Assembly (NCBI GenBank): GCA_002269645.1
Contig: NIVC01004744.1
Coordinates: forward strand, 1 to 36,384
Source of the DNA: Macrostomum lignano
Taxonomy: Eukaryota
DNA: 36,384 nucleotides
Direction: 5' to 3'
Below, one piece after another: positions 9,096 to 36,384 of this stretch. The first letter of the stretch is position 1; each line of letters begins with the position of its first letter. The notes under the pieces are model-generated. The model did not search any database, had not been told where the DNA came from, and saw only the letters and a program-made list of their open reading frames with translations. Both the position numbers and the translations under genes were made by a program.

Positions 9096-10341
9096 AATAG
9101 CTCGTACAGATAACGCAGGAAAAGTTATTGAACAATTAGCTCTTAGTCTTACAGTCCAATATTACAAAATTATTTTGGCAGCTATAGACTAATGGTATAA
9201 TTAGATACCGATATACCATGTTATAGTGAATGTATATATCAAGAAAGTAAATCTATAGCGGGAATTTTATCTTTTAAAAAAGCAATTTCGTTAAACAGCA
9301 GTGGCAAGCTAGTACTCAATAATTCAATGAGGAAATTCAATGTCTTCAAATTGCATGGCGTTGCTTAAACATTTTTGTCGCCTATCATTTCGGTGCGTCA
9401 CATATTCACGCTACCGACTAGTCAACGTACGTAGATTTTCAAAAAAACGTTTTAAGGTTTTAGCACTTTAAAAAAAACAATGACAAAAAAAGAAAAAATC
9501 CTACATTTTTGTGGCTTTAGTAAAGAAATGATCGAATAAAACATGTTGCAGCCACTGATATCTAGATTATTTTTATATATGTAGTATATTGCTACGTTAT
9601 TACTAATAAGTAGGATTTTTGGTTATACGAGTGGTATCGGCTTCGCATAACCTACGCTTGTAGGTACTATGCTTTCTTCTTAACCGTCTCTTTACCTGAG
9701 AATCTGGCACTCTCGTTCATCGCCCGTTTATTTCCCGTTAATTTCCCGCAGATTCAATAATTATTTCCCCGTGACGCTGTCATCTTGCTCCCGGTTCCCC
9801 TGGCTTTGGTTTGATGCATACCCGGTGTAAAAATCGACGTCGAATCGACTTCGAAAATTTTAGGCCGAATCGACGTCGAATGATGTCCCGGTGATTCGAC
9901 GTCGATTCGAAGTCGAGTTTTTCGGCCTAAATTTCGCGATACTTCCTTGATTTTCGCCTCTGAATGTGCCTCAAAACAAACAAAATTCTTTAAAGAAATA
10001 ACTTAATTTAAATATTCAATACGAGGGTGACTTCATGTAGTATATCTTTTGAATGCGCGGCATTAAATCAGAACAAAATAACCGCATAAAATGGAACACA
10101 AAAGCTGAAATATGGTTTATTTTTAAAGAAACTACGAGCGCAGTAAAGAGAAGCTTTGGTATATAAATTAACAAAACAATTACAACGATTAGAAAAGACA
10201 ACGCAAAAAGTCGGAAAAACTAAAAACTAAGAAATTTATGATGAATGGACTTTGATATCCAGCGTCTTTGAGAAGCTTATATGAGTAGTAGTTCGTATTT
10301 AAAAACGTATCATGATGCAGAAATCTAAGCACTCTTAAAAT

Positions 10342-12312: not shown

Positions 12313-14073
12313 GTTAATCTGAAACAGTAAATTGAATCAGTGAATTAAAACAGTGAACAGTAAATTATTTTGTATAAATAAAAAAATTGGCAATATTGCA
12401 CAAGAAATTAAAAAGGACTAGTCTGTTATTGATAATGCTTGGTTATTATTTGGCTGTCAATGTGGATGTTTTTTGTACTAAATTTTAAGTGAAAGATTCG
12501 ATGTAAATGTACACAGTTGTATAAATGATATTATGTATACTCAAAAATAGTATTTCCCAACTGTTTGAAATTCCCTCTATATTTAAAAAAGATGAACTTG
12601 ACCCTAGCTAATTCAAACATTATGCAGTCTGTACTGCTCAGTAAGAATAATTCAGCAATAGTTTAGAAATGATAATACAGTGTTTGCTTTAAATGGAACA
12701 TATTACTATAAGTAAAACATTGTCTATATCTACAAAAGCCATTTAAAGTGCAATAAAGTATCAAAGGCACTAAAGTTTATAAAGGATCTATAATAACAAA
12801 TAGTTAAAGTTTTTATTTTATAGGCCTAGGATCTCATGAATAATCCTAAACTAAAGCCCAAAAATAAAAAATTGGAACTTTACAACTGTAAAGGAAATAA
12901 AATTTTATGTTCTACATCATTAGAATTCCATTATATAAGTTGATAGAGTGCTTCTTGATTGGAGACAAATAAACCAAAAACTTGTTTAGCATCACCATGA
13001 GCAATTTGGATTAGAAGCCTATATCACTTATTATCATTTCATTAAAGCTTAATAAAAATATTTAAAAAGTTAAGCAAAGTAATAACTGAAGAATTGACAT
13101 CAATCTAGTTTGGACCCCATAAAAATTGTCATAAAATAATTATGATTTCATAATAAAATCAACAAAAAACAAACAATAAAAATTGTAGCAATTTATCTTA
13201 TAAATAGCTGAAACAAGAATGCTCACTATATTTAGCACATGCCTATTGGCTCTGTGCTTCAAACAACATGTTAAAAGTGTCTTTTTAAAGTAAGGTTGCT
13301 AATGTGACTACAGCTAGTTAATTATAAAGTTGCAAAAATTATAGAGAGAGAAGTTTTTTACTTTTTTTTTACAAAAATGAATGTTGAATAATATGGCTGT
13401 TGATTAGAACACCCCATGCATAGATGCTATGACTATAGCGACCAAATGCAATGACTAAAATTTTAGAAAAAGTCAGGAGAGAGCATATCCCAAATGACAA
13501 GTTAAAACATAAATAACTTTGTGAAAAAAAATCTGTCGAAAGAACTAAATTAATTTGCTGCTGCATACTGCGAATGCTATTTTAAATTGATTACTTATTC
13601 AGAACTGCATCTTATACTTAGAAATTGCAAACCTTTAAGTAACCTTCTAACTACGAGCCTTTTTTGCCCATGCGATCTAATAAGCTGCAAATTTAACGTC
13701 ATTAATTTAAACTCACACCATTTAGTCTCGTGTGCTGCAAAATAGCTCGAGTAAACATTATTCTAAACAAAAAATTTAAATTAATCTGTTACTAAAAGTA
13801 CTGCCGTTACGGTCAAGTTCATATTTACAAGAGTAAATTTAATTTGTTAAAACTGTTGATGCAACTCAAATCGAAGTCGAATTTTCGACTTCTATTCGGC
13901 ATCTACGTCAATTCGACTTTAGAAGAAAAATCGACTTCGAATCGACTTCGAATCGACGTCGAATTTTACACCGGGTAAGTTTCTAAAAAAAATTATATTT
14001 TGCTTTGGCTGTAATGAGTGTTACGTTCGGCCGCCACCCTATGCTCTCCATATCCCTGATTAATTTCTAGACT

Positions 14074-20054: not shown

Positions 20055-20411
20055 TCAGCGGCGTAGGCAAGGGGGGATATGGGGATGGATCCCCCCGTGG
20101 GCCTGGTCGGTGGGTTTTTCCGGAAACTGCGTAGCCAGACGTGAGGACATTTCCTTGAGTGTGAGGAAGGGATTTTCCTCCAGCGTCTCAGTCAGGAAGT
20201 CTCTCATCTCGTTGTCAGCCTTGCAATTTTCTTCTCTCCGACCGCCACGAGGTAGGGATTCAACTCTGCCATGGAGGCGGAACTCCGCAGCGATCCTAAA
20301 GGCGGACGCTCTCTTGATCTTGGGAATTTGAGCGGCAGCTAGGATGGTTGATCCATTGTTTACTGCGTCGATCAGACGCTGACGGTTTGCTGCAGGAATC
20401 GATGGTGCCAT
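20055..20411 (-). pseudogene. Truncated Tc1/IS630-like transposase, N-terminal DNA-binding part only
   Basis: MAPSIPAANRQRLIDAVNNGSTILAAAQIPKIKRASAFRIAAEFRLHGRVESLPRGGRR...ENPFLTLKEMSSRL: paired-like HTH, PRGG linker and second HTH; the frame ends before any DDE domain. Confidence 0.7.
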
Positions 20412-20791
20412 CACAGTGAAATCCAAGGGGTCAGATGCAACCCAAGGGGTGAAGAAGGAGAGCTGGCTGAGGGTCGGAGGGTTAGAGCGATATCTGAAGG
20501 CTTTCACACTCAGTCTCATATTGAGCGTCTTATTCTCATTTTGATATTCCATTTTTTAGTCTATGGCCAAGCCATTCCTGCAGCCAATACTGGGCATGCT
20601 CTGGCCGTGGCTAGCCTGGCCTTGCTTGCCCTCTGGTAAATAAACCAGATAACACCACAAGATAACATTCGCTCAAACAAGATAACATGCCCTATTCCGG
20701 TTATGCAAAATGTTATCTTGTATGAATCTTGTTTGCGTGACGAAATCTTACGTTTCCTTGTTTCAAACAAGATTCAAAAAGGATTTGCTGA

Positions 20792-21330
20792 CCAGATAAC
20801 AGTCGGGTAATTCATGCGAATCCTGCAGGGAAACATCGTGTTATCCTGTTTGTTATCTTGTTTGTTATCCTGTCTGGCAAACAGGATTCGTTGACCAGGT
20901 AACAGTCGGGTAATTCATGCGAATCCTGCAGGGAAACATCGTGTTATCCTGTTTGTTATCTTGTTTGTTATCCTGTCTGGCAAACAGGATTCGCTGACCA
21001 GGTAACAGTCGGGTAATTCATGCGAATCCTGCAGGGAAACATCGTGTTATCCTGTTTGTTATCTTGTTTGTTATCCTGTCTGGCAAACAGGATTCGCTGA
21101 CCAGGTAGCAGTCGGGTAATTCATGCGAATCCTGCAGGGAAACATCGTGTTATGCTGTTTGTTATCTTGTTTGTTATCCTGTCTGGCAAACAGGATTCGC
21201 TGACCAGGTAACAGTCGGGTAATTCATGCGAATCCTGCAGGGAAACATCGTGTTATGCTGTTTGTTATCTTGTTTGTTATCCTGTCTGGCATCAAACAAG
21301 ATTTCCTGATCAGATAACAGTCGGGTAATT
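20792..21330. repeat. Left subterminal array: 5 x 103-bp units plus a partial unit
   Basis: Units start at 20792, 20895, 20998, 21101, 21204 (CCAG(A/G)TAACAGTCGGGTAATTCATGCGAATCC...). Confidence 0.93.
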
Positions 21331-21557
21331 TATGATAATAAAAGGCAGAAGGCACCGACAATCAAATTTCGCAGTAAAGAAGCGTATAAAAAGTTGGTGC
21401 TTCAAGATGTTGTGAGAAGCATCTATTTAACAGCGGGGTGTCAACTAAACGGCATCTCAACATGAACGAAAACATCTGGAGAACAGTGTGGCATAAGTCT
21501 GAGTTTCGGGAGTCCAGTTATAAGTAGATCTACTTATACTGTGGATACCAATTGATA

Positions 21558-23183
21558 TTACTGGATTGGTGATCTGCTGCGACCTGGTGTATCAGCTGGC
21601 GAGCTCGGACCTGCTGTACTCGGACGCGACTCTGGCGGCAGTCGACGCGTGAGCCAGACGTTTGAAAGACCGGGTCGCGCCCGCGGACGGCGATTAATGA
21701 GACCGCCGACGGGGACTTGCATTATATGTCGGCGCAATGGAACGACTCTGTAGTATTAAGTTAAATTGAATGGCGATGGATGACAGTTTCTCCGACATAT
21801 ACACAGCTATAAAAAACACAGTAAGGTACATACACTCTCGATTGTCTAGCTCTAACAGACAGTGACGGTGTGCCGACAGGCATTGCCATATTATACGACC
21901 GTTCACAAGTAGCGTCAGCTGTGTCGATAGAAGTTTCATTCGTAGCATAGTCGTCATCCGGAAACAACTGGCTTTCGTTGATCGGCTGCTCGTAGACCGG
22001 AGACGAAGTGAATGTCGTGCCATCTGATGCGCCGGCTTGCGCGGCGATGGCTTCGTTGTGCAGTTGCGTCCACAAAATGCCGACTGCACTGGAAACAGCT
22101 CTTACCTGATTGTCTTTGCAATCCCGTGTGCCAACGGTAATATCCAACCGACTTGGCGTTGCAGATGTCGCTAGTGCGATGGACGATCGTCCAACGGCGT
22201 CATCAACTGCGTCGTTCGAAGCAGTGACACCCTCTGGAAACAAGTGGCTTTCGTTGAACGACTGCTCGTAGACTGGAGACGAAGTGAATGGCGTGCCATC
22301 TGAAGTATCCGCTTGCGTTGCGATGGGGTCCTCGTGCAGTTGCGTCCACGAAATCCCGGCTGCGCGAGGGAAATATGTTACTTGATTGCCGCCGATCGGC
22401 GGTGTATTAAAGCCAGCCCACCAGACAGACATTAGCGAGCCGCAGGGAGCAGCGATATAGGATGGAACTACGCCAGCAGTTCCGCTGGTACGACCTACTG
22501 GTTCCACTGGCAAATCAGCCAGAAATAGTTCCAGTCGTACTACCTCTTGACGCAAGTAGCTGCCCGTGCTGCAGCCGCCGCATGCTTGTCTACGGCAACG
22601 CGGACAGCGAGGTGTCGTGCAGTCGACAATCTACAGAATTAGTTGTATATAGCGGCTGGTTTCGTTAAGGTCAGTTAGTTCGATAAAAAGTAAAACAGGT
22701 TATACGTACGTATGTGCATCCCGTATATACGTGTAGGATGTTACTAGGTACAATATTGACAGAGCGTTTGTCTGGACGACCGGGCGGTGCAAAAATTGTC
22801 GGTCGGCGCAACAGAATAACATCGCCACGACGCAACGGCCCAATCTGCGAGCGTACGCTGCCTTGGACACTGCAACCAATCATCCCGGTTGGGTCGCATG
22901 CATCAATTGTAAAAGCCGACGAGGATGACGCTGAGCAGATCTGCTGGTCGGTAACTCGTTGAATAAGTAGCAACAATATCGGAATCCTGTTCGTTGAGTC
23001 GCGAATGTGGCCGACAGTACAGAACTCTGACAGCTTCGTGCACAATTCGATCCCGATGTCGCCGATGGCGTTTCTCCAAGCAGGTGTATTCCATATGGAC
23101 TCCGAAAACGCATACTTTGCGTCGTCGGTACTCAGTCGCAGCGTGCTTAATGGACCAACCGTGCGATTTGAAGCGCTGGACAT
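21558..23183 (-). CDS. HROB/MCM8IP (DUF4539)-like OB-fold protein with a Cys cluster and low-complexity tail; probable exons 23183-22710, 22630-21834, 21747-21558
   Basis: WNTPAW..AIGDIG...NRIP.LLLLI...DPTGMIGCSVQGSV....LRRGDVILLRRPTIFAP......VNIVPSNILHVY matches the HROB OB-fold pattern (DPTG.M.G.VH, L..G.VLLL, F.P, N.T..N..HIY). Donor GTACGT at 22709 and acceptor at 22631 join in phase to ORF 21761-22555. The last exon and the true start are less certain. Confidence 0.72.
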
Positions 23184-24252
23184 CTGTAACAGAGAGAAGT
23201 GGAGGTTGTTCGGTGAGACGGCGTGGCCCGAAAACAGCGTCGGACACCAGCGATCATGAGATGGGAGACAGGATTGAAAGGACGTTGCATGGGTATTTGT
23301 TATTACCATTGACTTAACATAACTCCGCATATAATACAACTAACTCGGCACCCAGACACAAGTCTGTTGGGACAGAGTCCAGACCTCTAGCAATTGATTT
23401 AAATCAAAACGGGTCGTCCCCTAGAACTCGCACTACCACTTTTTCGGAATCTCGGCAAGACAGTACGTATGAAATGACTTAAAAGACGTAATAAAAATGT
23501 TCAGTATTTTTCATTTATAGTGGTGCCAAAAAGCACGACAATAAAGACATTAAAAAAGCAGCTAGGAAAAAGATTGGAAAAGCTGTATGTGTTATAAGTA
23601 ATACTTTAGAATATTATTAGTACTGTTAACGTATGTGGACGTTGTAGATGAAACTGACGTACGTGCTGCACTCGTTGATCCATGTTTACGGGGGAAACAC
23701 GTGCCCGAGGGCCCTCCTAGTACTGTAGGAGATGAATTCGTGTTATAAAAATAGATACTGAGTCACACAACATTACGTACTTTCTTAGAGAACTCATGCC
23801 TTCATTAAGTCAAGTAGGTGCACCGAATATGGTTCTAGTTCCCAAGGTATAATAGAGTTACACAGTATTACGTGCATTGGGGCAATTAGAATTCCCACGT
23901 ATAAGTACGGACTCCTGGATCATTTTTCGCGACAAGAAGTTGTGTCTGGCCTTTCTAAGTGCACGCCTACTTCAAATCGCAAGTCGCACTGAACATGAAA
24001 CAGTAAACCGTAAACGTTGAACAGAAAAAAAACTGGAAAACTGAAATATGAAGCACACAAAGATGAATGGCAAAATGCCGGACGAAATTTCAAACGATTA
24101 TCGTCCTGAATTAAAATAGCAGATCTGCTATGGGACGAAGTACTGTGTAAAAAAACAAACAAAAACAGTAAGTTCATTGTGCGAAAACAATTTATAGTAT
24201 TAATCCGTTATGATCCGTTATCCTATAAAACTACTCAACGCCGACAGTCAGC

Positions 24253-25896
24253 CTAAGGTTCGGCGGCTCCCTCGACGGCTTCCTCGGCTGTGCCGGCCAG
24301 CTGTGTCTTCTTAGCGGCGCGCCATCTTTTAACAGCGTCGGATTTTTTAGCCTTTTCTTCCGGAGTCTGCCTGCGTTTTATGGCCGTCTCGCGGCACTGA
24401 TAGTGCTGACGCCGAAACTCCTTTTCGTCTATGTTTACGCCAACGTGCTTGGCGTATGCCATAGCCACGGCTAGCTTGCCGTCGTCACATCGCTGGCCAC
24501 CTACTTGACCCTTGACGCGACCCGAGCAAGTCTCCCGCAAAAACTGGTCCTCGCTGAATAAAGCGCGAAGGACCGCTCGTATAAATGAGCCATTAGCGGT
24601 AGCCAATTTTTTTGCATCTGGCCGATCGGCCGATGCCAGTTGATGAATGGCTTCCGTTCGCTGCTCGATTTCGCGCTTGTCTTTCGGCTCTACTAGTATT
24701 CTCCTAAAGCCGTTGTCGTTTGACAGGCGAACCAATGCGCTTGGGTTGACTTCACGTGGCCGCATTGAAACAATAGCGTCGGCAGCCTGCACAGCACCCA
24801 TAGTCTGCTTCATTTGCGCCGACTGGTCAGTGGACCAATGGCTGTGGGCATATATACCAACTTCTCGAGGTTCGTCATCGATTAAAATGGGACCAGTTTC
24901 GTCTTGCCGATCGGCATACTCTGCGTCGACACTATCAGAGCCTCCGATTGTGCATCTGGCAGCATGTACTGCACTGAGTAGTCGCTCACACCGGCGCTCA
25001 ACCACGCTCATAACCTGCTGCATTTTGGCGTCTCGACTGGAGTCAGTGTTCCCGTTCTGCGCCATTTGTTCTTCAAGCGAATGCAGTTGAGCGCGAAGTT
25101 GATCAACTTCGTTCAACAACTGTGTGTTACTTTGCGCCAGATGTGCCGAACGTTCCCTCTCATTTTCAATTTCATTTTCCAGAGCCCGAATGCGATCACC
25201 TGTGATGAAGTGCGTTCAGATAAATATATAGAGTTGCTCTTATAGAATAATTTATTGACTACGTATTACATACAAATATATTGAAATTACGCAGTAAACC
25301 AATAGTTACGCACGTTGCTCGTCCACAATGGAAACATGCGAGCGCAATTGGTTGGTTAGTGCACAACACGAACCACAAGGATTCGGCGCACTATTAGTTT
25401 GCAACGGGCCCGACGCGGATGCGACGCGTTGCGCAGCAGCAATGCTACTGTAGGGTCCACTCCATATAGTGGCGCCATATCTTGCGGCCGAGGCAGTCTT
25501 TGTTTTGGCTGTCACGACGACAATGCGACAACCAACAGTGGGTTGCTCATGACGATCGTCAAGAGCAACAATATCGGTGCTAAGTATCGCACCTCTGTCG
25601 TTGTTGCTGTCGTAAATGACCGCCCACGCGGACGAATCTGCAGATTTGTAACCGCGCATTCCGTCAGGGGCACATTCTGCACTTGCACTTTTATTTTGGC
25701 GGTTCTTCTTCTTTGTTGACCTCGCGCTGTCGGACCCATCGAATATTTCCGACTGAATTTCCGACGAAGCTTTCGGGACTGTCGATTGGTCGTTTGGTCG
25801 TACACCCTTGCGCGGTCGCTTTTCGGCTTGTTCTGCGTCTATATCCACTGGATGTTCGTCCTCTTGTAAGTGAGTAACGCAGTTCTTCTTGCCCAT
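24253..25896 (-). CDS. Coiled-coil + C-terminal BEN-domain protein, ~509 aa, exons 25896-25314 and 25199-24253
   Basis: Phase-1 intron 25313-25200 joins the two long ORFs. Heptad region RIRALENEIENER...LLNEVDQLRAQLHSLEEQ. C-terminal FIRAVLRALFSEDQFLRETCSGR...DDGKLAVAMAY...FRRQHYQCRE fits the BEN pattern (F.R.LL..LF..E.L...T..G...LD..K). Confidence 0.7.
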
Positions 25897-26676
25897 TACT
25901 TTCCAAATCAAGCAGACGACTGGAAAACGATTTTTAACAGCATATTTACTTCAAATATCGCATTGTACAATGTTTAAGAATAGAAAAGGACGCTCTCAAG
26001 ATACGATCCTAATTTCCACAAAATCTTACGTACACGCTAAAGTTAGATCTAAGGAATTTCGTTATAGGGAGAGTGGACGGCCAACCAATCGATGTGGTGA
26101 ACTACATGCTAGGTTCGATGCAACGTTGCAATCACGAAACACGAGACATAGTGTAATGATGGACGCAAAATGCGTGAATTGCGCATATTTACTGATTGGT
26201 GTATGATACGAGGTCCGTTATGATTCATTTTAATGAAAAAATTAAAACGGCAGATTTCATACATATTTAAAGTGATTAAGATTCATTCACATTGTCGTCA
26301 TAGTGGTTGTGGAAGTATACTGGTGTATAAACGAATGACCATTGGTGTAAAGATCGTGTAAACTTGTGAACCTTCGCCTTATTTAATGCCTGCGTGAATG
26401 AGTCTTATAACGTTCATAGATAAAGTTGAAGGCGTTTATAAATAGGGTGGCAACATACAGTGGAACAGATTTTATCTCAGCAATGAGCGGTACTATACTT
26501 GACGTTACAAAGACTGCTTAATCAGTTCGTACAAATTGTGGGGTATACGCAAACAAACGTTTGAGGTGACAGCTTACTTAAAATTGTCTTTTCCGCGAAC
26601 TTATTAAGCAACGTCAATACATTACAATGGGCTTGGACAGTACAAGGAGCACACAGGCGTATAGGCCCGAGCAAAT

Positions 26677-29457
26677 TCACGAAAAAGATAGTTGCGCATG
26701 CGGCAGCGCTACTACATGCGTGTCGCTGACAGCACATGATCCCACAATCATTTTGATAGGAACACGAATAACATAGCCGCCAATGTCACCGAAGGGATCG
26801 CAAGCCAGCTTCCGGACGTGGATGAGTCGGCAACCTCGATTTGGCGCATCAACCGGAACGGCCACGAGCACTGATAGAGGATCCTCCATCGGTGCGGCCA
26901 GACGGAGCGGTTGCATCAGTAGATGTAGATCGCCTACATCCTCATCCTCTTCCAATTCGTAGACGCGACCAAAGTCTATCGCTGACCGACCAGCGTCAGT
27001 CCAGACGGCAACAAAGCTGGAGACAACTCTTTTCTGTGACATAGATTGTCTGAACACATCGATCATTGTGCCGTCATGCAATGTAACTCGCTCCCATTTA
27101 CTCGGGTTTCCAGCATATCTTCTAGGTCGTGAAACTGTGCCACACCTGATGTTCTTCGTTGTCATGCGTCTGGCTACTGGCGTGTCAGTCAACTGAAGAT
27201 CTTCAGTTGTCTTGTCCGCCAATTGTGCCACTAATAGCTCAGTTTGGATGACGTTCGCTATTTCTACGTCGGTCGCTCGCGAACCGCGTATGCGTTTACG
27301 AATACTACAATGAAATGACTCGAACAGCGATGCTGATAACTGGTGTATTGGCCCTGCCAACTCTGCGTGCATCAGGGTATGCACGCATACCTGATGAGCG
27401 TTATAAGTCAATGCCCGATTCGAGAACATCATCGGGAGTAGGCGATGGAAGTACGATAATGTCGTTCGCACATGTGTCAGCTCGCGGATCGAGGAACCAA
27501 CGCATGACAATGCGAACATTGCGGACGATAGAGCCAGCAGTAGCTGATAGTACCTGCCGTGATCATAGCATGCAAGGAAATCTTCCAGTACCATCGGACC
27601 GTAAGCTAACATCCACATTTCAAAATCGTGGCCCCGATACCTCTTCAATAGGTTTAGTGACCTTGGTCCGCGTCTCTGAACACTACGCGGCACTCGAATT
27701 CTTGCGAGCCGTTCATCAATCAGGCTAATCCGTCGGTACAAATCGGGGTTTCTCGACGTCTGGTCTGGCTTTTGATGTCGTATTAGGAACAACTGGTACA
27801 TCAGATAGCCGGTCAGACCAGCACAGGTTTGGTGCAAATAACACGGCGGGCAACCCCTAATGTAGTCGAACCCGGCCAGTTCACTCAGTGGAGACTTGGC
27901 TCGCACTCCAAGCGTGTCTGTCTTGTCGTCAGTACGAGCCACGCGCATTCTGTCTCTTTCATATTCGTGCCGATCGGCAAGCATGTTAGTGTCGGTGACG
28001 CACCGAAACTCTGTCTGTGTACACCCACGTCTGACAGCGGCGTTCAGCATAGCGTTGGTGATTTCGAGCGGAAACATACGTCCGGATCCAAACGGCTGTT
28101 TTTTTGTTCGAATATAACATTTTTCGCATCCGTATATCGCGTTGAATCGCTTCATACCTAGTGCATCCGCTCGTGCTGGGGCATCGAAGATGGCCTGGAA
28201 AGGGTGCAATCTAAGGATTTGCTTATCGCCGTGTCCGTCTACATATTCGACGCCTTGGAACCTTAGATCGTTCAACAGACGAACAACAATTGGTAGGAAA
28301 CTTTCCGCATGCAATTTAACGTGTCCAGCCCAGACTCCGCATACAATCACGTACTTATACTTCATGCGTTCGTACACCTCTGTTACAGACATGTACACTG
28401 GACAGACCTCGACGTTACTGCTTTTCCGCAACGAAAATCCGTCTGAACATAGCGTGTACGACAGATCGCATCTACGTCGAGGTTCAATCGACGCTAGGAA
28501 CTCCCTGTACAGTGCACTGTTGACGTAGTGTAACTGACGTCTAAACATGTCGTCTGACGGTTGATCAGCCGGCCACACAACAGTCTCCAGCATTCCGCGT
28601 CGGATGCAGCGCCGAAGTTGATCTTTTGCGTCACATAGCCAGAAGCTTGCAACTTCTTCGCTACCGCAAGTTGAACACGTCGGCGCGTTTCGACCGAGTC
28701 GATTTTGTCTACACTTCGCACACACAGTGTAGCATTCTGAGGTCGGTAATGCAGATCTGCATTCTTGTCGAAAGCGAGCTTTCACAACCTCAGAAAGTAC
28801 ATGCGGCGACCGCGGCACATCAGCGCTAGGCATCAGTTTGCGTAATAAACCTAGTAGTTCTCTTTTCTGCTCTCTGCATGCTTTCCACTTGGAGCAGTAG
28901 TCCGCAATTAATGTGGCCGCTTCTCCTGTCGTTAGAAGCACATCCGCTTCGGCTATTTTATGAAATGGTCTGTCTATGAAAATAGGATCAGCTCTCGAAC
29001 TGGCTGGATCGCTCTGGTCGGATGCGTCGCTGCCCTCCTCATTGAGGCTGGCTGGGTCGATCTGGTCGGATGCGTCGCTACCCTCTTCGTTGAGACTGGC
29101 TGGGTCGCTCTGGTCGGATGCGTCGCTGCCCTCCTCATTGAGGCTGGCTGGGTCGATCTGGTCGGATGCGTCGCTACCCTCTTCGTTGAGACTGGCTGGG
29201 TCGCTCTGGTCGGATGCGTCGCTGCCCTCCTCATTGAGGCTAGGGACCAGAGTGTTTGATGGCAGATCTGCCAGATTCGCGCGTTTGTCGCGTAATCGAC
29301 GTTGCCGTAATGCTTGCATTCTCTGCTGGCCAGTCAATGCGGGTGCGGCCCTTTTACGTATGCCAAGCCGCCAATTTCTCATATAGTGCGTTGCATTGTG
29401 CGTTTCGTCCGTCTGTTCCGGCCCTGCAGACTGTGCTGAGGTGCCGGCCTTGTCCAT
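26677..29457 (-). CDS. CACTA/EnSpm-family DDE transposase, 926 aa, intronless
   Basis: Motifs in the expected order: CSDGFSLRKSS, VCPVYMSVTE, CGVWAG, FDAPARA, FNAIYGCEKC, GVRAKSPL, CYLH, IDERLARIRVP, YGPMVL, TYNAHQ, SASLFESF (Transposase_21/DUF4218-type). Confidence 0.88.
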   Translation of the reverse strand: MDKAGTSAQSAGPEQTDETHNATHYMRNWRLGIRKRAAPALTGQQRMQALRQRRLRDKRANLADLPSNTLVPSLNEEGSDASDQSDPASLNEEGSDASDQIDPASLNEEGSDASDQSDPASLNEEGSDASDQIDPASLNEEGSDASDQSDPASSRADPIFIDRPFHKIAEADVLLTTGEAATLIADYCSKWKACREQKRELLGLLRKLMPSADVPRSPHVLSEVVKARFRQECRSALPTSECYTVCAKCRQNRLGRNAPTCSTCGSEEVASFWLCDAKDQLRRCIRRGMLETVVWPADQPSDDMFRRQLHYVNSALYREFLASIEPRRRCDLSYTLCSDGFSLRKSSNVEVCPVYMSVTEVYERMKYKYVIVCGVWAGHVKLHAESFLPIVVRLLNDLRFQGVEYVDGHGDKQILRLHPFQAIFDAPARADALGMKRFNAIYGCEKCYIRTKKQPFGSGRMFPLEITNAMLNAAVRRGCTQTEFRCVTDTNMLADRHEYERDRMRVARTDDKTDTLGVRAKSPLSELAGFDYIRGCPPCYLHQTCAGLTGYLMYQLFLIRHQKPDQTSRNPDLYRRISLIDERLARIRVPRSVQRRGPRSLNLLKRYRGHDFEMWMLAYGPMVLEDFLACYDHGRYYQLLLALSSAMFALSCVGSSIRELTHVRTTLSYFHRLLPMMFSNRALTYNAHQVCVHTLMHAELAGPIHQLSASLFESFHCSIRKRIRGSRATDVEIANVIQTELLVAQLADKTTEDLQLTDTPVARRMTTKNIRCGTVSRPRRYAGNPSKWERVTLHDGTMIDVFRQSMSQKRVVSSFVAVWTDAGRSAIDFGRVYELEEDEDVGDLHLLMQPLRLAAPMEDPLSVLVAVPVDAPNRGCRLIHVRKLACDPFGDIGGYVIRVPIKMIVGSCAVSDTHVVALPHAQLSFS
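29002..29241 (-). repeat. 5 x 48-bp (16-aa, SLNEEGSDASDQ(S/I)DPA) acidic coding repeat in the transposase N-terminus
   Basis: Alternating variants give a 96-bp higher-order period. Confidence 0.93.
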
Positions 29458-30559
29458 CCTGGAGAAGTCAGATTTCGACTGTTCTGTAACGAAACGGTAT
29501 AATAATAATAATCGGAGGAACTACATGACATTCATGTATGCAATAGGTTTAGATGAATGTGTCAACTCTATATAGACGTGGGTAGCTATTCTAGATCACT
29601 ACGGTATCCTACTTAAAATGAGGGGATCAATGACTTCTGCTAATACTACTGATTATTGATTGTGATTGATTGATTAGTGATACTGATTGTTACTACATAC
29701 GATTGTTCTAACATATGGGCGGATGAACGGTGACACTTGAATTTTTGCAATAGAAACCATGACTAGATAGTTCAATGAAATGAATGCAAGGCAATGCAAT
29801 CGGGATCTGTAATAAAACGGAAGCACACGTTTTCGTAAAAAACAAGTTAAGTAACAAGAGGTGGAATTTGCTTACTGGGAAATGCATAAAAGTCAATAAT
29901 GAGATAGGATGGATACGAATAGTTAAAAGAAAACATAATTGCACAAATGTAACGCGTAATAATGTCATATTAAAGTACTTAGGTTTCGATATGTTCTCCG
30001 TTTGTTGGCTGGCAGATTTGGCCTGCTAGATTGTTCATCTGCTGCTATAGCTACCAAACGGTGCTATATTCACTCTGCTTTTATCTTCACTCTGATGTAA
30101 CGGCGCTCAACGGCGCTCAACTGCACTGTCCTCAGTTACTAATAAATGAAAAAATGGTACGAAACTGCAAGCATCAAATGCCGAACTGACAAGTAAGTAA
30201 TAAACGAAAAAATACTTTACTAGTTACTTGGGTACGCGGGTTTGGCATCCGATATTCGAATACGGCCAAACCTCTGTACTTTGGCTGGCAGATCTGCCAG
30301 CCTCCGCACAGACACCAGACTGGCCACATTTGCCCTTCTAGATTGTTCAGAAGTCCGTTCTGACAGTTTCTGTGCACGCGTATTCAATTTCAACCGATAA
30401 CAATTCACAGCTAGAACAGGTACATAACATACGTCCAATTACAGTCGGAACTGGGCCTTGGATCGGGGCAGGTGCACTTTATCCTGCACGAACACCTGGG
30501 ACTGCAGAAGCAGTGCACTCGATGGGTGCCCCGTTCGCTGTCACAGAAGCAGGGACGGG

Positions 30560-30992: not shown

Positions 30993-33093
30993 TCACAAGT
31001 CACAAATTAGTTCATGAACCGGGCAATCGCCGTCCCTGTGCGTACACTCTGGACCAAAGTCCTTCGGTATGGAGCACAGCAACTCGTCGATCGACGGGTT
31101 GTCTGTGCTACACGCGGCATCGGCATGTCGAGTGGCAAGCAGGCGCGGGACGCTGACCCTGTCAGGCAGTAGGCCCATGCTGTCGAAAGCGTCTCTGCGA
31201 CGCGTCGCCTCGTCGCCGGCGCACTTTAACAGTTCAACGCTGGGCTCGCCGGCATTAAAATTTAAATAATGGCCTTCTACGACCACAGTCATGATGCTGT
31301 AGCATAATACAATATGCTGCAGACACCTCAGCTCGTTTGGCCCAGCTTTAAGCAGTCTGGCGCAGGCGTCGCCGAGCAGTGCGTCAGTTATTCGGCGACG
31401 ACCGCCGCCACTGTTTCCCTGACGCCCGCCAAGCTGCTCAGTATACCCAAACTCCATGAACAGCGCCTGCGATGCCGTGCACAGCGGTGCATCGCAATCG
31501 ACACTGTCCTGCATACTGTGGTATGCAGGCTTTGATTTTGAAGGCAGTTTAAACGCTTTCAGCGTATGCCGAAGCATATACTGGGCCGCGTCAAAGTTAG
31601 AAGTGCCGTGTCGATGGTTTAGAGTCTGATGCAGACCCAATACAAGCACGGCAAGACGCTGGGCTAGTAGTCCGTTCTCTATGTGCAACACCATTGTTGA
31701 CTTGGCCAAGCAGATCTGCTGGCCCTCGTTGATGAAATGATTGGTTAAAGGCTGCACCAAACGTGCTACATTGGCCGGCCAGTCGAAAATTGACACTGCA
31801 GTTAGTGCATCGCACCCGCATTGTACGGCGCGTATGCGCGCCTCTTCCCTGCCTGCGGAGATGGCATTTGCATGACGCTCTCCGAGTGTCAGGCGGCGAT
31901 TTGGTGGGTTTAGCGGCTGAAACACTAATTGTTGATTTTGTACACAAAGTCGAAAAACGTCCTCACAGTGCGTGCCGACGAAGCCGCTAATGTCACGGTC
32001 GGCCATCGATGTACTGACACCGCGAATAGCATATGCTAATGGCTGGCTAGTCAGCATTGAGAACCGCCGTTCAACTGTGTCAAATGGCGTGCCACATTCA
32101 TCTCCCGCGTCCACTATGGCGCACAGTATACGGACGATTGACTCTATACACATCATCTGCAAAGGTATTATTGTATGCGCGTTTATCAGTAGCATTGCTA
32201 TGGCATTACAAGCAGTATATGAATAGTCGAATTCTACTTACGCGTGCGTCGTCCATAATTTCAGCGAAAGTTTTTCTAATCGATTCGACGGCGGCAGCGT
32301 CTGCAGGGTCGACGGATGCAGCTGCGACAGGAGCGCAATACTGGCCGCGACGCTGGGCGTTGGCTGGCAGATCTGCCGGCCGCCGCCCATGTGTCGGCTT
32401 TGCCACCTGGCCGGAAGGTGTTTGCGCTGATGCCGCATTTCTTGGTGGTCCCCTGCTAGGACAGTCGTTCTGAGCTGCTGCAGCTGCGATAGGTGCGCGA
32501 GATTGGCCGAGACGCTGGGCGTTGGCTGGCAGATCTGCCGGCCGCCGCCCATGTGTCGGCTTTGCCACCTGGCCGGAAGGTGTTTGCGCTGATGCCGCAT
32601 TTCTTGGTGGTCCCCTGCTAGGACAGTCGTTCTGAGCTGCTGCAGCTGCGATAGGTGCGCGAGATTGGCCGAGACGCTGGGCGTTGGCTGGCAGATCTGC
32701 CGGCCGCCGCCCATGAGTCGGCTTTGCCACCTGGCCGGAAGTGGTTTTCGCTGATGCCGCATTTCCTGGCGTCTCTTCATCGACGACGATGTCGCTGCCG
32801 TCGACGTGCAGCAGCCCTTTGCAGTGCACATTCACGAATTCGCGCACACTAGCGCAGCCAACGCTCTGGACTGCCTCAACAAGCGTTTGGCGCCGGACAG
32901 CTTGGCACGTTTTGTTGATTTCTGTCAAACTTTTACGAGTATTCCTTTGTTCAAATGATTGCTGTGGCCGAGGTACACGAATCATTGTTATTAGCTGTTC
33001 GCGCAGCTGCGTGACCGAGTAGTCGACACAGTTTGTACCAATGGTGGTTTGCATTTCGCAGTATGATGCAAGGTCTGAAATTGCAACATACAT
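30993..33093 (-). CDS. ~671-aa protein with two LOTUS/OST-HTH-like domains separated by a repeat linker, plus a C-terminal domain of unknown type; exons 33093-32242 and 32156-30993
   Basis: Perfect GTAAGT donor (32241) and TTTGCAG acceptor (32157) join ORFs 32206-33093 and 30993-32195 in phase 0. Two related segments: KSLTEINKTCQAVRRQTLVEAV.SVGCASVREFVNVHCKGLLHV and VRILCAIV...CGTPFDTVERRFSMLTSQPLAYAIRG...ISGFVGTHCEDVFRL. The gene model is well supported; the LOTUS call is a by-eye match. Confidence 0.6.
32343..32770 (-). repeat. ~2.6 x 162-bp (54-aa) coding repeat
   Basis: GACGCTGGGCGTTGGCTGGCAGATCTGCC at 32349, 32511, 32673. Confidence 0.93.
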
Positions 33094-33542: not shown

Positions 33543-33857
33543 GCTGCCTTGAACCACACTAGAAGCGAGGATTGATTATCCGTCGCAGGTCAGCTTATCA
33601 AAGCTGCCTTGAGCCACACTAGAAGCGAGGATTGATTATCCTTCGCAGGTCAGCTTATCAAAGCTGCCTTGAGCCACACTAGAAGCGAGGATTGATTATC
33701 CGTCGCAGGTCAGCTTATCAAAGCTGCCTTGAGCCACACTAGAAGCGAGGATTGATTATCCGTCGCAGGTCAGCTTATCAAAGCTGCCTTGAGCCACACT
33801 AGAAGCGAGGATTGATTATCCGTCGCAGGTCAGCTTATCAAAGCTGCCTTGAGCCAC
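33543..33857. repeat. 60-bp satellite array 1 (5 units + partial)
   Basis: GCTGCCTTGAGCCACACTAGAAGCGAGGATTGATTATCC(G/T)TCGCAGGTCAGCTTATCAAA head to tail, no spacers. Confidence 0.95.
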
Positions 33858-35436
33858 AACAGATATGGTTACCGACCGTTGTAGTCTGTATAGACTACTC
33901 GCTTGACTTGATCTGCTCACGGCTGGTGCAACTGCAAACGCCTTAGACAAACCAATGGAGCATGCACCGACAAAAATCGGGTTAGCGTCTATCTTAATAG
34001 GAAAGTTGCTTTGCATACTGGGCCAGATAGAGCTATTTGGAACCATGCCACAGTCTCCGTCTAGACACCCAGCTGTGCCAAACAATATGGTTGGCTGACT
34101 ATGCTTCTAAGCGTCAAATATGACGATAGAATCATTCAGCCGGTTGACACACTAAGCAGCTTTGATAGACTACATGCCAGTGGTAGTCAAACCTCTCGCA
34201 AACAATCAGGGCGCAACAATTTTTCAATTGTCACCTGTACGGAGGATGGGCACAGCCTCACATTACGGACGCTACAGTGCCGCCGTAAAGCAGATCAATT
34301 CACCTTGCACTTTCGAGGCTTTATTATCCCTCGGATTAAAGATTGATCCGCCTAGTCAAATAAAAGTGACTACTCTTAGCCGCTGCCTTGAGCCACACTA
34401 GAAGCGAGGATTGATTATCCGTCGCAGGTCAGCTTATCAAAGCTGCCTTGAGCCACACTAGAAGCGAGGATTGATTATCCGTCGCAGGTCAGCTTATCAA
34501 AGCTGCCTTGAGCCACACTAGAAGCGAGGATTGATTATCCGTCGCAGGTCAGCTTATCAAAGCTGCCTTGAGCCACACTAGAAGCGAGGATTGATTATCC
34601 TTCGCAGGTCAGCTTATCAAAGCTGCCTTGAGCCACACTAGAAGCGAGGATTGATTATCCGTCGCAGGTCAGCTTATCAAAGCTGCCTTGAGCCACACTA
34701 GAAGCGAGGATTGATTATCCGTCGCAGGTCAGCTTATCAAAGCTGCCTTGAGCCACACTAGAAGCGAGGATTGATTATCCTTCGCAGGTCAGCTTATCAA
34801 AGCTGCCTTGAGCCACACTAGAAGCGAGGATTGATTATCCGTCGCAGGTCAGCTTATCAAAGCTGCCTTGAGCCACACTAGAAGCGAGGATTGATTATCC
34901 GTCGCAGGTCAGCTTATCAAAGCTGCCTTGAGCCACACTAGAAGCGAGGATTGATTATCCGTCGCAGGTCAGCTTATCAAAGCTGCCTTGAGCCACAACA
35001 GATATGGTTACCGACCGTTGTAGTCTGTATAGACTACTCGCTTGACTTGATCTGCTCACGGCTGGTGCAACTGCAAACGCCTTAGACAAACCAATGGAGC
35101 ATGCACCGACAAAAATCGGGTTAGCGTCTATCTTAATAGGAAAGTTGCTTTGCATACTGGGCCAGATAGAGCTATTTGGAACCATGCCACAGTCTCCGTC
35201 TAGACACCCAGCTGTGCCAAACAATATGGTTGGCTGACTATGCTTCTAAGCGTCAAATATGACGATAGAATCATTCAGCCGGTTGACACACTAAGCAGCT
35301 TTGATAGACTACATGCCAGTGGTAGTCAAACCTCTCGCACACAATCAGGGCGCAACAATTTTTCAATTGTCACCTGTACGGAGGATGGGCACAGCCTCAC
35401 ATTACGGACGCTACAGTGCCGCCGTAAAGCAGATCA
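33858..35436. repeat. Near-identical 440-bp direct duplication (33858-34297 and 34997-35436), each copy following a 60-bp array
   Basis: Constant offset of 1139 bp; the ORF track also shows identical ORFs at 33816 and 34955. Confidence 0.93.
34382..34996. repeat. 60-bp satellite array 2 (10 units + partial)
   Basis: Same unit as array 1, starts at 34382 and every 60 bp to 34982. Confidence 0.95.
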
Positions 35437-35976
35437 GTTGTCTCATTAGGGCGAGGTTTCATTACCCCTCGCTTCTTAAGAGGAATTAGCGCCGCTGACC
35501 AAACGGATGCCAGGGATTGCCTGATGGGATAACCATTTGCTGGGGTCTGTATTCAGCGGTTTTCCATCGGAGGCTTCCTCTCAAAATCCCCATGGTACTT
35601 GTAATGGATGCCCGACTGATTCCCACTGGTCCTAAAATTTTTCCGGATCATCACCGCCTGGTACTTGGCTGAACTTCGGCTCAAGGGGAGCTGATCTGGA
35701 TGATTTTTCCGGATCACTGGGGAATTCCGACTGAAGTCTCGAAATCTCACCCGGAGCATTTTCATCTGGAATCCTACTGAAATTCGGTCTACACCCAGAA
35801 TTCAGTAGAGTTCTGGGTGAAAACTTGACGGAAAATCCAACCGGAACAGTTTCCTTTTCCCAAAATACTACCAGATCATATTTCTGGACCTTTTTCCGGG
35901 AAAAAAGTGCTGTTCCGTGCCAAAAAAACTGATTCGGGCTTCATCAGAAATAATAAATTAAAAATCGGGCGAAAAT

Positions 35977-36384
35977 CCGATTCAAACAAGATTCAGTCAA
36001 ACCAGATAAACATAGAAATATCTGGTGGCGAATCTTGTACTGTTATCTGATTTTCAAACAAGATTCGCGCATGTTATCGGGCGAAATTCCGATTCAAACA
36101 AGATTCAATCAAACAAGATAACAAAAAATATCTGGTGGCGAATTTCTACTGTTATCTGATTTTCAAACAAGATTCGCACCATGTTATCCTGGTGAAATTC
36201 CGATTCAAACAAGATTCAATCAAACAAGAAAACAAGAATTATCTGGTGGCGAATCTTGTCATGTAATCTGATTTTCAAACAAGATTCGCGCCATGTTATC
36301 TGGTGAAATTCAGATAACTCACCAGATAACAGTCAAACAAGAAAACAAAAATTATTGGTGGCGAATCTTGTCATGTAATCTGAT
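35977..36384. repeat. Right subterminal array: ~111-112-bp units, continuing past the window end
   Basis: CCGATTCAAACAAGATTC at 35977, 36089, 36200; shares CAAACAAGAT, GTTATC/GATAAC and GCGAATC with the 103-bp left array. Confidence 0.88.

What the first reader, a model, noticed from the sequence alone, without database searches (positions are those of the whole stretch)
21558..23183. Transposon-borne HROB/MCM8IP-like OB-fold gene
Seen: PAW-x-A-xx-D-x-G, DPTGMIGCSVQ, LRRGDVILLRRPTIFAP and VNIVPSNILHVY in the order of the DUF4539 OB-fold, followed after an intron by a Cys cluster (CTTPRCPRCRRQACGGC) and an internally duplicated low-complexity tail. Established: HROB binds ssDNA/branched DNA and activates the MCM8-MCM9 helicase in recombination-associated DNA synthesis. 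Inference: a cut-and-paste element could use such a protein to promote gap repair of the excision site from the sister chromatid, raising copy number, or to bind the element's own hairpins. I do not know this domain as transposon cargo.
Basis: partly seen in the sequence, partly recalled or inferred. Interest (0 to 1): 0.75.

Follow-up and report, generated by a model that had tools for sequence, protein, structure and literature searches.

The report
HROB-type OB-fold gene inside a DNA transposon
A large cut-and-paste DNA transposon, probably from a Macrostomum-like flatworm, carries an apparently intact extra gene whose protein contains the OB-fold domain of the recombination factor HROB; this cargo has not been described before, and its function is untested.

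Summary
On the minus strand, an ATG at 23183 opens a 158-codon exon. A 79-nt GT-AG intron joins it to a 289-codon exon. Residues 66-154 match Pfam PF15072 (HROB/DUF4539) above the curated cut-off (34.8 bits for the whole protein, 38.4 for the domain alone; cut-off 30.8). Reversed and shuffled controls give no hit. A basic Cys cluster follows, then a strongly acidic tail that is duplicated internally.

The gene is the last of several co-oriented genes in an element of at least 15.7 kb. Its 926-aa transposase shows the CACTA/Mirage/Chapaev/Transib signature: D, D, C(2)C, H(4)H, E. One 10-mer motif occurs 16 times in the window, only in the two subterminal arrays that bracket the genes.

A complete 9.9-kb relative from a marine metagenome (L001) has the same transposase and ORF2/ORF3 core. 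It has only 287 bp where the window holds 2.9 kb containing this gene. The gene is therefore a lineage-specific acquisition.

The protein is not a canonical HROB. I found no long N-terminal region, no MCM8-binding stretch and no close homologue. Helping gap repair, or docking host MCM9, is inference only. The element's right end lies outside the window, and I could not retrieve a second full copy.

The parts
21761..23183 (-). HROB-like gene, minimal two-exon model (447 aa)
   Evidence: ORFs; splice model and translation; Pfam hit
22710..23183 (-). Exon 1 (aa 1-158). The ATG is directly preceded by ctctctgttacag, an acceptor-like site
22631..22709 (-). Intron 1, 79 nt, GTACGT...TGTAG, phase 0
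   Evidence: The in-frame codon before exon 2 is TAG, which overlaps the acceptor
21761..22630 (-). Exon 2 (aa 159-447 plus stop): Cys cluster, linker and acidic duplicated tail
22722..22988 (-). HROB/DUF4539 OB-fold, aa 66-154; basic (pI 10.1)
   Evidence: Pfam PF15072, 34.8 and 38.4 bits against a cut-off of 30.8; controls negative; charge
22571..22621 (-). Cys cluster C-x4-C-x2-C-x4-C-x2-C (aa 162-178); basic; possible zinc knuckle
   Evidence: no Pfam match
21936..22388 (-). Two in-frame copies of a 177-nt unit (21936-22112 and 22212-22388) that encode the acidic, aromatic repeat SDGT-FTSSPVYEQ-NES-LFP
   Evidence: dN/dS between the copies about 0.5; tail charge -18
21530..21715 (-). Possible third exon, joined through a 120-nt GT-AG intron at 21835-21716; uncertain
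   Evidence: Same frame as exon 2 and conserved with the Macrostomum lignano gene model P0001
20629..20775 (+). Left terminus of the element: candidate TIR CCCTCTGGTAAATAAACCAGATAAC (20629-20653) followed by nested palindromes
   Evidence: Unique in the window. It resembles the L001 TIR start CCCGCTGAAAAAA. ssDNA fold z = -5.6
20775..21334 (.). Left subterminal tandem array, 103 bp x 5.4
   Evidence: its motifs are shared only with the right array
24253..25911 (-). ORF2 (25306-25911) and ORF3 (24253-25119), the element's second core gene, probably two exons
   Evidence: 27% and 29% identity to the two ORFs downstream of the L001 transposase, in the same order; cag acceptor before ORF3
26677..29457 (-). 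Transposase, 926 aa, with the CMC(T)-type signature D339, D425, C444-x2-C447, H688-x4-H693, E713
   Evidence: 45% identity to P0003; the signature residues are invariant in both; weak DUF4218 match, E 0.042; signature definition from PMC12730594
30993..33093 (-). ORF-X (295 + 400 aa, joinable by a short intron), a second lineage-specific gene of unknown function
   Evidence: no counterpart in L001
35964..36384 (.). Right subterminal tandem array, 112 bp x 3.8, cut by the end of the window. The right TIR lies outside the window

Best explanation
The interval encodes an apparently intact spliced gene for a protein of about 450-485 aa. The protein has a short N-terminus, a basic HROB/DUF4539-type OB-fold (aa 66-154), a basic Cys cluster and a strongly acidic tail with an internal duplication.

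Shown: it is the last of several co-oriented genes inside a cut-and-paste DNA transposon of at least 15.7 kb of the CACTA/Mirage/Chapaev(/Transib) kind. On the minus strand the order is: right subterminal array, ORF-X, transposase, ORF2/3, HROB-like gene, left subterminal array, TIR at 20629. A complete relative has the same core and no such gene.

Inferred origin: this lineage acquired the gene, most simply by capturing the OB-fold part of a host HROB gene and then adding new C-terminal sequence.

Inferred mechanism: the element expresses it as an accessory factor that connects transposition to host recombination-associated DNA synthesis. In human HROB this OB module docks on MCM9 and is required to activate MCM8-9. 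The transposon protein would use it, perhaps with the basic Cys cluster holding DNA and the acidic repeats holding a partner such as RPA, to favour long-tract, template-copying repair of the break left when the large element excises. That would restore the donor copy and raise copy number.

The confidence given is for 'a real HROB-family OB gene carried as a probably functional accessory gene of this transposon'. I would put the specific MCM8-9 gap-repair mechanism at about 0.2.
For: Domain: PF15072 above the gathering score, nearly full model coverage, negative controls clean.

Coding integrity: open frames of 158 (exon 1) and 289 codons joined by a canonical phase-0 intron. An open frame as long as the observed 289 codons is rare in shuffles, 2 of 2000.

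Inside the element:
- The 10-mer CAAACAAGAT occurs 16 times in 36 kb, only at 20674-21293 and 35983-36276, mostly in opposite orientation at the two sites.
- Tandem arrays sit at both sites.
- All large ORFs between them are on the minus strand.
- A TIR-like terminus lies at 20629, outside the left array.

Family architecture: L001 has a 33-nt TIR (97% match) at 97-129 and 10011-10043, arrays at both ends, then transposase, ORF2 and ORF3. Only 287 bp separate the ORF3 stop from the array, and tblastn finds no HROB-like sequence. The same interval in the window is 2.9 kb and holds the gene.

Repeated nature: two different Macrostomum lignano gene models (P0001, fused to LAMTOR5, and P0002) contain decayed fragments of the tail at 73-74% identity.

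Old or divergent capture with a frame still open: no HROB protein reaches E<=0.001 by phmmer in 1.84 billion representatives.

Functional lead: the human HROB OB-fold binds MCM9 and is essential for helicase activation (PMC11055865). Basic OB and Cys modules sit next to a tail of charge -18. Human HROB binds RPA1 through two acidic motifs (PMC7290032). The same acceptor-then-ATG context precedes this gene and the transposase.
Against: - I could examine only one copy that carries the gene.
- The element's right end is outside the window, so no TIR pair or target-site duplication brackets the gene.
- The only complete relative lacks the gene, so it is not needed for transposition in the family.
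- The Macrostomum lignano fragments are decayed.
- dN/dS between the two tail repeats is about 0.5, which shows only weak constraint.
- I recognised no MCM8-binding region and no N-terminal RPA motifs.
- The single-sequence AlphaFold model was unusable (pLDDT 33), so the fold rests on the Pfam match alone.
- A 12-of-15 TIR-like match at 21437-21423 on the minus strand could mean that 20629-21437 is a separate short element.
Confidence: 0.55

Rival explanations
1. Inert captured gene fragment (transduplication). The element picked up part of a host HROB gene, as CACTA-type and other DNA transposons often do, and merely carries it. The open frame reflects a young copy, not selection.
For: - The gene is absent from the complete relative L001.
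- Only the OB part of HROB is present.
- The tail is low-complexity and duplicated, with dN/dS about 0.5.
- Macrostomum lignano carries only decayed pieces.
- The element holds other lineage-specific material of unknown function, ORF-X and internal duplications.
Against: - The start codon, a canonical intron and 447 or more open codons are all retained.
- The domain is too diverged for phmmer to find any HROB in 1.84 billion proteins, so a recent capture from a typical HROB is unlikely.
- The acceptor-then-ATG context is the same as for the transposase.
- A new basic Cys cluster and an acidic tail have been added as a coherent architecture.
Confidence: 0.25
2. Functional, but as a decoy. An OB-only protein that docks on MCM9 without the MCM8-binding region would compete with host HROB. 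It would damp or redirect MCM8-9-dependent repair rather than promote it.
For: - Human HROB needs both the OB-MCM9 contact and the disordered MCM8 contact to activate the helicase (PMC11055865).
- Only the OB module is recognisable here.
Against: - There is no evidence of any interaction.
- The benefit to the element is unclear, since weaker long-tract repair would lose donor copies.
- The divergent tail could supply the missing contact.
Confidence: 0.1
3. Host gene outside the element. The transposon really ends between ORF3 and this gene, and 20629-21437 is a separate short non-autonomous element of the same family, so the HROB-like gene is ordinary host DNA between two insertions.
For: - A TIR-like CCCGCTGTTAAATAG lies at 21437-21423 on the minus strand, matching the 20629 terminus at 12 of 15 positions.
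- The right end of the large element is not in the window.
Against: - There is no array, family motif or TIR-like sequence between 21437 and 24253.
- The inner match has no family motif or palindrome beside it. I estimate 0.04-0.2 such matches by chance, and the 12-mer pattern search expected about 1 hit.
- The architecture is unlike a canonical HROB.
- Tail fragments occur at two or more Macrostomum lignano loci fused to unrelated genes.
- The gene has the same orientation and start context as the element's other genes.
Confidence: 0.08
4. Not an HROB relative at all. The Pfam hit is a chance or generic OB-fold resemblance.
For: - The score is only 4-8 bits above the cut-off.
- No single-sequence homologue was found and no PDB hit.
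- No usable structure model was obtained.
Against: - E is 1e-8 to 1e-9, with 82 of 85 model positions aligned.
- No other OB family reaches E<=1 on the spliced protein, or E<=10 on the OB segment alone.
- The reversed and shuffled controls are negative.
Confidence: 0.03

Closest known systems
HROB / MCM8IP / C17orf53 (Pfam PF15072, formerly DUF4539)
   Same: The OB-fold domain matches the family model above the curated threshold over nearly its whole length. The protein also pairs an OB module with an acidic, probably disordered region.
   Different: - In human HROB the OB-fold lies in the C-terminal part (residues 492-575 of 647, Pfam domain; PMC11055865), after a long disordered region. That region holds two RPA1-binding acidic motifs and the MCM8-binding stretch, residues 396-413 (PMC7290032, PMC11055865).
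- Here the OB-fold is near the N-terminus, no upstream coding exon is visible, and the acidic region is C-terminal.
- A Cys cluster has been added.
- The gene sits in a transposon and is repeated.
- It is too divergent for any HROB to be found by phmmer.
CACTA/En-Spm, Mirage, Chapaev (CMC) and Transib-related DNA transposons (CMCT clade)
   Same: - The transposase has D, D, C(2)C, H(4)H, E in the order that defines the clade (PMC12730594).
- There is a weak DUF4218 match over the H(4)H-E region.
- It has long subterminal repeat arrays with short motifs, a second gene beside the transposase, and a large size.
   Different: - The termini read 5'-CCC(G/T)CTG rather than the usual 5'-CA...TG or CACTA.
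- No target-site duplication is recognisable in L001.
- No Pfam transposase family reaches threshold.
- Only one relative turned up among 5.8 billion proteins, so this is a poorly sampled lineage.
DNA transposons that carry a host-derived DNA-metabolism gene: TET/JBP in KDZ, Plavaka, EnSpm and other elements; RPA-like ssDNA-binding genes in plant Helitrons
   Same: An accessory, non-transposase gene related to a host DNA-transaction protein is carried inside the element in some lineages of a family only (PMC12730594; PMC4683698). The Helitron case is also an OB-fold protein.
   Different: The cargo here is an HROB-type OB-fold, not RPA70 or TET/JBP. The carrier is a cut-and-paste element rather than a rolling-circle Helitron, so an ssDNA intermediate is not an obvious rationale.
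Gene-fragment capture (transduplication) by CACTA and Mutator-like elements
   Same: Part of a host gene, here only the OB module, sits between the element's ends and is absent from a related element.
   Different: Captured fragments are usually recent, close to the parent gene and non-coding. This one is highly diverged, keeps a start codon, an intron and a long open frame, and has gained extra modules.

Membership tests
HROB / PF15072 | OB-fold domain matching the family HMM above the gathering score | tested here: met
   34.8 bits for the whole protein and 38.4 bits for the domain alone, against a cut-off of 30.8. Model positions 2-83 of 85 are aligned. Reversed and shuffled controls are negative.
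HROB / PF15072 | Canonical architecture: long disordered N-terminal region followed by a C-terminal OB-fold | tested here: not met
   The OB-fold is at aa 66-154 of 447-485. No convincing coding exon lies in the 1.07 kb upstream. The disordered-looking acidic part is C-terminal.
HROB / PF15072 | MCM8-binding stretch (human residues 396-413, within 362-440) | not testable with these tools
The requirement is taken from PMC7290032 and PMC11055865.
HROB / PF15072 | Acidic RPA1-binding motifs | tested here: inconclusive
   There are none N-terminally. The tail carries two copies of an acidic, aromatic repeat (charge -18) that could play this role. That is inference only.
HROB / PF15072 | OB-fold residue contacting MCM9 (human F553) | not testable with these tools
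   F131 in PTIFAP sits where I recall the human residue to be. That comes from memory of the human sequence, so it is a lead and not a test. It needs an alignment with real HROB sequences or an AlphaFold-Multimer model.
HROB / PF15072 | Single-copy host gene that co-occurs with MCM8 and MCM9 | not testable with these tools
Tail fragments at two or more Macrostomum lignano loci argue for a repeated sequence.
CMC(T) DNA transposons (CACTA/EnSpm, Mirage, Chapaev, Transib) | [quoted passage not shown] | tested here: met
   D339, D425, C444-x2-C447, H688-x4-H693 and E713 are all invariant between the window protein and P0003. The criterion is from PMC12730594. The catalytic roles themselves are inferred from the pattern.
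CMC(T) DNA transposons (CACTA/EnSpm, Mirage, Chapaev, Transib) | Match to a curated transposase family (Transposase_21 or DUF4218) | tested here: inconclusive
   Only DUF4218 matches, at E 0.042 and 14.2 bits against a cut-off of 27. P0003 gives no hit.
CMC(T) DNA transposons (CACTA/EnSpm, Mirage, Chapaev, Transib) | Termini 5'-CA...TG-3' (CACTA in EnSpm) | tested here: not met
   The L001 TIRs start CCCGCTG at both ends, and the window's left end starts CCCTCTG.
CMC(T) DNA transposons (CACTA/EnSpm, Mirage, Chapaev, Transib) | Target-site duplication of 2-5 bp | tested here: inconclusive
   The L001 flanks (..ACAAT and CCTCA..) show no duplication, and a metagenome contig may join different insertions. 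The window lacks the right end.
CMC(T) DNA transposons (CACTA/EnSpm, Mirage, Chapaev, Transib) | Subterminal repeat arrays carrying short motifs in inverted orientation at the two ends | tested here: met
   Window arrays at 20775-21334 and from 35964 to the window end, with motif distribution. L001 arrays at 178-656 and 9629-9964.
Helitron RPA-like cargo | RPA70-type OB-folds carried in a Rep/Helicase element | tested here: not met
   No RPA family hit. The carrier encodes a DDE-type transposase. The Helitron at 797-6700 is a separate element 14 kb away.

The most novel reading that the evidence does not exclude
A cut-and-paste DNA transposon has taken the MCM9-docking OB module of the host recombination factor HROB and rebuilt it, with a DNA-binding Cys knuckle and acidic partner-binding repeats, into its own adaptor. 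The adaptor would recruit the MCM8-9 helicase to the excision gap and drive long-tract copying of the 16-kb element from the sister chromatid. That would make it a transposon-encoded regulator of recombination-associated DNA synthesis that turns conservative transposition into replicative gain.
Probability: 0.12. Interest if true: 0.8.

Novelty: new variant of a known kind. Interest (0 to 1): 0.5.

Why it matters
Cut-and-paste transposons are thought to gain copies partly because the host repairs the empty donor site from the sister chromatid. No element is known to encode a factor aimed at the DNA-synthesis step of that repair. An element-borne HROB module would make the idea directly testable. 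It would also give a minimal natural variant of the HROB OB-fold for separating its MCM9-docking role from DNA binding.

If the gene proves inert, the locus is still useful in two ways. It documents gene capture by a poorly sampled animal lineage of CACTA/Mirage/Chapaev-like elements with unusual CCC termini. It also explains chimeric gene models in the Macrostomum lignano annotation, for example the LAMTOR5 fusion.

Tried and rejected
Searches and models that led nowhere:
- Homologue searches for the HROB-like protein. The word-indexed search found only two Macrostomum lignano chimeric models that match the tail. The OB-only query found nothing even at E<=10.
- The phmmer scan of 1.84 billion representatives gave two hits, both repeat-driven artefacts: a FAZ1 repeat protein and a proprotein convertase.
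- PDB sequence searches found nothing at E<=10.
- The single-sequence AlphaFold2 model had mean pLDDT 33, so I ran no fold search on it. I left the second structure job unused because no homologues were available for an alignment.
- Further copies of the element: two metagenome scans, one viral and one prokaryote-genome scan with the transposase alignment all came back empty.
- Exact-protein look-ups for the transposase, two versions of the exon-1 ORF, P0001 and P0002 found nothing on record.
- The three other contigs that carry P0003 could not be opened.

Ideas considered and rejected:
- That L001 might hold a decayed HROB gene. tblastn found nothing, and TIR to TIR there is no room for one.
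- That tblastx matches flanking the gene (23880-23812 and 21439-21377 against L001 9367-9494) mark the insertion boundaries. They score only 22-23 bits, and blastn shows no nucleotide similarity.
- The alternative donor CAC|GTATAT for intron 1. It would cut off the last residues aligned to the Pfam model.
- The inner TIR-like match at 21437. I judge it probably chance.
Full report
**What is at the coordinates.**

The window is eukaryotic and rich in repeats. The feature lies on the minus strand.
- An ATG at 23183 opens 158 codons and runs to a GTACGT donor, so exon 1 is 23183-22710.
- A 79-nt intron ends in TGTAG (22709-22631).
- Exon 2 (22630-21761) then runs 289 codons to a stop.
- The codon just before exon 2 is a stop that overlaps the acceptor AG. 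This frame is therefore open for 289 codons with no start codon near its 5' end, which is the usual mark of an internal exon.
- In 2000 shuffles of 21500-23300 the longest open frame averaged 123 codons (sd 27.5). It reached 289 twice and 222 eleven times.

The spacing after PAW is two residues, not one. The Cys cluster CTTPRCPRCRRQACGGC spans aa 162-178. The tail contains an in-frame duplication of 177 nt at a spacing of 276 nt, with 79% nucleotide identity and 65% amino-acid identity.

The 3' end is ambiguous. One reading stops at 21761 and gives 447 aa. The other uses a 120-nt GT-AG intron (21835-21716) and a third exon that ends at 21530, giving 484 aa. The second reading is suggested only by in-frame conservation with a Macrostomum lignano gene model.

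**Is it an HROB-type OB-fold?**

hmmscan against Pfam gives a single family, PF15072 HROB (formerly DUF4539).
- The spliced protein scores E 1.6e-8 and 34.8 bits. The OB segment alone scores E 1.3e-9 and 38.4 bits. The curated cut-off is 30.8 bits.
- The match covers model positions 2-83 of 85.
- No other family reached E<=1 on the spliced protein, or E<=10 on the OB segment alone.
- The reversed sequence and three shuffles gave no HROB hit.

That is the only positive evidence for the domain.
- Single-sequence searches found no HROB protein. The phmmer scan of 1.84 billion representatives gave two repeat-driven artefacts.
- The word-indexed OB-only search gave nothing. PDB searches gave nothing.
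- AlphaFold2 without an alignment failed, with pLDDT 33.

The domain is therefore a real but very divergent member of the family.

**What the rest of the protein looks like.**
- The OB segment is basic (pI 10.1, charge +4.8) and the Cys cluster is basic (+3.7).
- Residues 251-410 are strongly acidic (charge -18, pI 4.05). They carry two copies of the repeat SDGT-FTSSPVYEQ-NES-LFP.
- The rest of the protein has no Pfam match.
- I see no convincing coding exon in the 1.07 kb between this ATG and the upstream gene.

Canonical HROB is arranged the other way round. A long disordered N-terminal part holds two RPA1-binding acidic motifs and the MCM8-binding stretch (human residues 396-413). The OB-fold follows in the C-terminal part, at 492-575 (PMC7290032; PMC6771392; PMC11055865).

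**The carrier element.**

All large ORFs between about 20.6 kb and the end of the window are on the minus strand:
- ORF-X, 33093-30993
- a 926-aa ORF, 29457-26677
- ORF2, 25911-25306
- ORF3, 25119-24253
- the HROB-like gene

The 926-aa protein has one relative among 5.8 billion proteins, P0003, at 45% identity. The residues D339, D425, C444-x2-C447, H688-x4-H693 and E713 are invariant in both. This pattern of D, D, C(2)C, H(3-4)H, E defines the EnSpm/CACTA, Mirage, Chapaev, Transib group (PMC12730594). A sub-threshold DUF4218 match (E 0.042) covers the H(4)H-E part.

Tandem arrays sit at 20775-21334 (103 bp x 5.4) and from 35964 to the window end (112 bp x 3.8).
- They share short motifs found nowhere else in the window. 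CAAACAAGAT occurs 16 times, only at 20674-21293 and 35983-36276.
- The motif is mostly reversed on the left and always forward on the right.
- Outside the left array, 20629-20775 is a stack of palindromes. As single-stranded DNA it folds with z = -5.6.
- This stretch begins CCCTCTGGTAAATAAACCAGATAAC, which is unique in the window.

**The comparator that decides the cargo question.**

P0003 is encoded on a 10,198-bp marine-metagenome contig, L001. That contig holds a complete element.
- The TIRs are 33 nt and 97% matched, at 97-129 and 10011-10043, and both start CCCGCTGAAAAAATCGTCCGG.
- Arrays lie at 178-656 and 9629-9964.
- The genes are the transposase (3923-6514), then two ORFs with 27% and 29% identity to the window's ORF2 and ORF3, in the same order.

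The TIR start CCCGCTG resembles the window's CCCTCTG. In both elements the TIR lies 50-120 bp outside the array.

In L001 only 287 bp separate the ORF3 stop from the array, and tblastn finds no HROB-like sequence. In the window the same interval is 2.9 kb and holds the HROB-like gene. ORF-X also has no counterpart in L001.

The family core is therefore TIR, array, transposase, ORF2/3, array, TIR. The HROB-like gene is an addition in the window's lineage, and it sits inside the termini.

**Evidence that the gene is repeated, and the likely host.**

The only database matches to the protein are two Macrostomum lignano gene models. One is annotated as LAMTOR5. Both contain the tail at 73-74% identity, with frame disruptions, fused to unrelated sequence. 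This fits dispersed, decayed transposon copies. It also suggests the window comes from Macrostomum or a relative, which is an inference.

An acceptor-like ...ctctctgttacag lies directly before the ATG, and cttctccagg lies before the transposase ATG. Macrostomum lignano uses spliced-leader trans-splicing and has operons (PMC8629364). The element's genes may therefore be processed from one transcript. This is also an inference.

**Weak points.**
- The right end of the element is outside the window, so no TIR pair or target-site duplication brackets the gene.
- No second full copy could be retrieved.
- A 12-of-15 TIR-like match (CCCGCTGTTAAATAG, 21437-21423, minus strand) could make 20629-21437 a separate short element. 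It has no family motif or palindrome beside it. I estimate 0.04-0.2 such matches by chance. The 12-mer pattern search itself expected about one hit.
- No array or motif exists between ORF3 and the gene that could serve as an alternative element end.
- dN/dS between the two tail repeats is about 0.5, which does not settle anything.

**How it most likely works.**

Shown: an HROB-family OB gene with an intact reading frame lies inside a CMC(T)-type transposon as a lineage-specific gene.

Inferred: it was captured from a host HROB gene and has been kept because it helps the element.

The best functional lead comes from human HROB. HROB without its OB-fold still binds ssDNA but cannot activate MCM8-9. 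The OB-fold docks on MCM9, and the F553E mutation breaks that contact (PMC11055865).

An element of 16 kb or more that excises leaves a gap whose faithful refilling needs long-tract repair synthesis. That is the step HROB-MCM8-9 promotes (PMC7290032, PMC6771392). A protein with this OB module, a basic Cys knuckle and acidic repeats could tether that machinery at the donor site.

The other readings are these:
- It is an inert captured fragment.
- It is a decoy that competes with host HROB.
- It is a host gene that lies outside the element.
- The Pfam match is chance.

**Comparison with what is known, and novelty.**

Transposons that carry host-derived DNA-metabolism genes are known. Examples are RPA-like OB-fold genes in plant Helitrons (PMC4683698) and TET/JBP genes in KDZ, Plavaka, EnSpm and other elements (PMC12730594). 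Gene-fragment capture by CACTA-type elements is common, which I state from established knowledge.

Searches for HROB plus transposon and for DUF4539 found no report of this domain in a mobile element.

I rate this a new variant of a known kind. The carrier is an under-sampled animal lineage of CMC(T)-like elements with atypical CCC termini.

Interest is moderate.

Noticed in passing
window 797-6700 (minus strand): A Helitron: Helitron_like_N at 4155-4904 (E 1e-52) and a Pif1-type helicase at 797-1531. Its frame is split into at least five ORFs, by introns or frameshifts. A 69-bp coding tandem repeat lies at 6008-6280.
   Followed up: partly
window 30993-33093 (minus strand): ORF-X: ORFs of 295 and 400 aa that a GTAAGT...TTTGCAG intron could join. 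It contains a 162-bp (54-aa) tandem repeat at 32317-32769, has no Pfam hit and has no counterpart in L001. It is a second lineage-specific gene of the same element.
   Followed up: partly
window 33543-35440: Two arrays of an identical 60-bp unit (33543-33858 and 34382-34997). Each is followed by the same segment of about 440 bp, so this is an internal segmental duplication inside the element.
   Followed up: no
window 23184-23196 and 29458-29467: Acceptor-like sequences end in AG directly before the ATG of the HROB-like gene (ctctctgttacag) and of the transposase (cttctccagg). ORF3 is likewise preceded by cacag. This could mean spliced-leader trans-splicing of a polycistronic element transcript, or 5'UTR introns.
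   Followed up: partly
window 21423-21437 (minus strand): CCCGCTGTTAAATAG matches the candidate left TIR at 12 of 15 positions, in the orientation of a right end for 20629-21437. No family motif lies next to it. It is probably chance, but it is the one feature that could place the gene outside an element.
   Followed up: partly
window 20055-20552 (minus strand): A fragment with an IS630/Tc1-like helix-turn-helix (HTH_32, E 5e-4) directly abuts the element's left terminus. It may be an older transposon into which the element inserted.
   Followed up: no
window 9805-9921 and 13926-13991: Inverted repeats of about 50 nt (80% match) built from TCGAATCGACTTCGA units, 4.1 kb apart. This is a candidate non-autonomous or foldback element.
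   Followed up: no
window 29000-29241: The transposase N-terminus carries five copies of a 48-bp (16-aa) acidic repeat, ASLNEEGSDASDQxDP, that is absent from P0003.
   Followed up: no
L001 94-99 and 10041-10049: The complete relative has CCC...GGG termini and no recognisable target-site duplication (flanks ..ACAAT and CCTCA..). This is unusual for the CACTA/Mirage/Chapaev group. It could also be an assembly chimera of different insertions.
   Followed up: partly
P0001 / P0002 (Macrostomum lignano gene models): The UniRef entry named Ragulator complex protein LAMTOR5 (A0A1I8HEW7) and a second model are chimeras that read through decayed fragments of this transposon gene. They are probably annotation artefacts.
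   Followed up: partly
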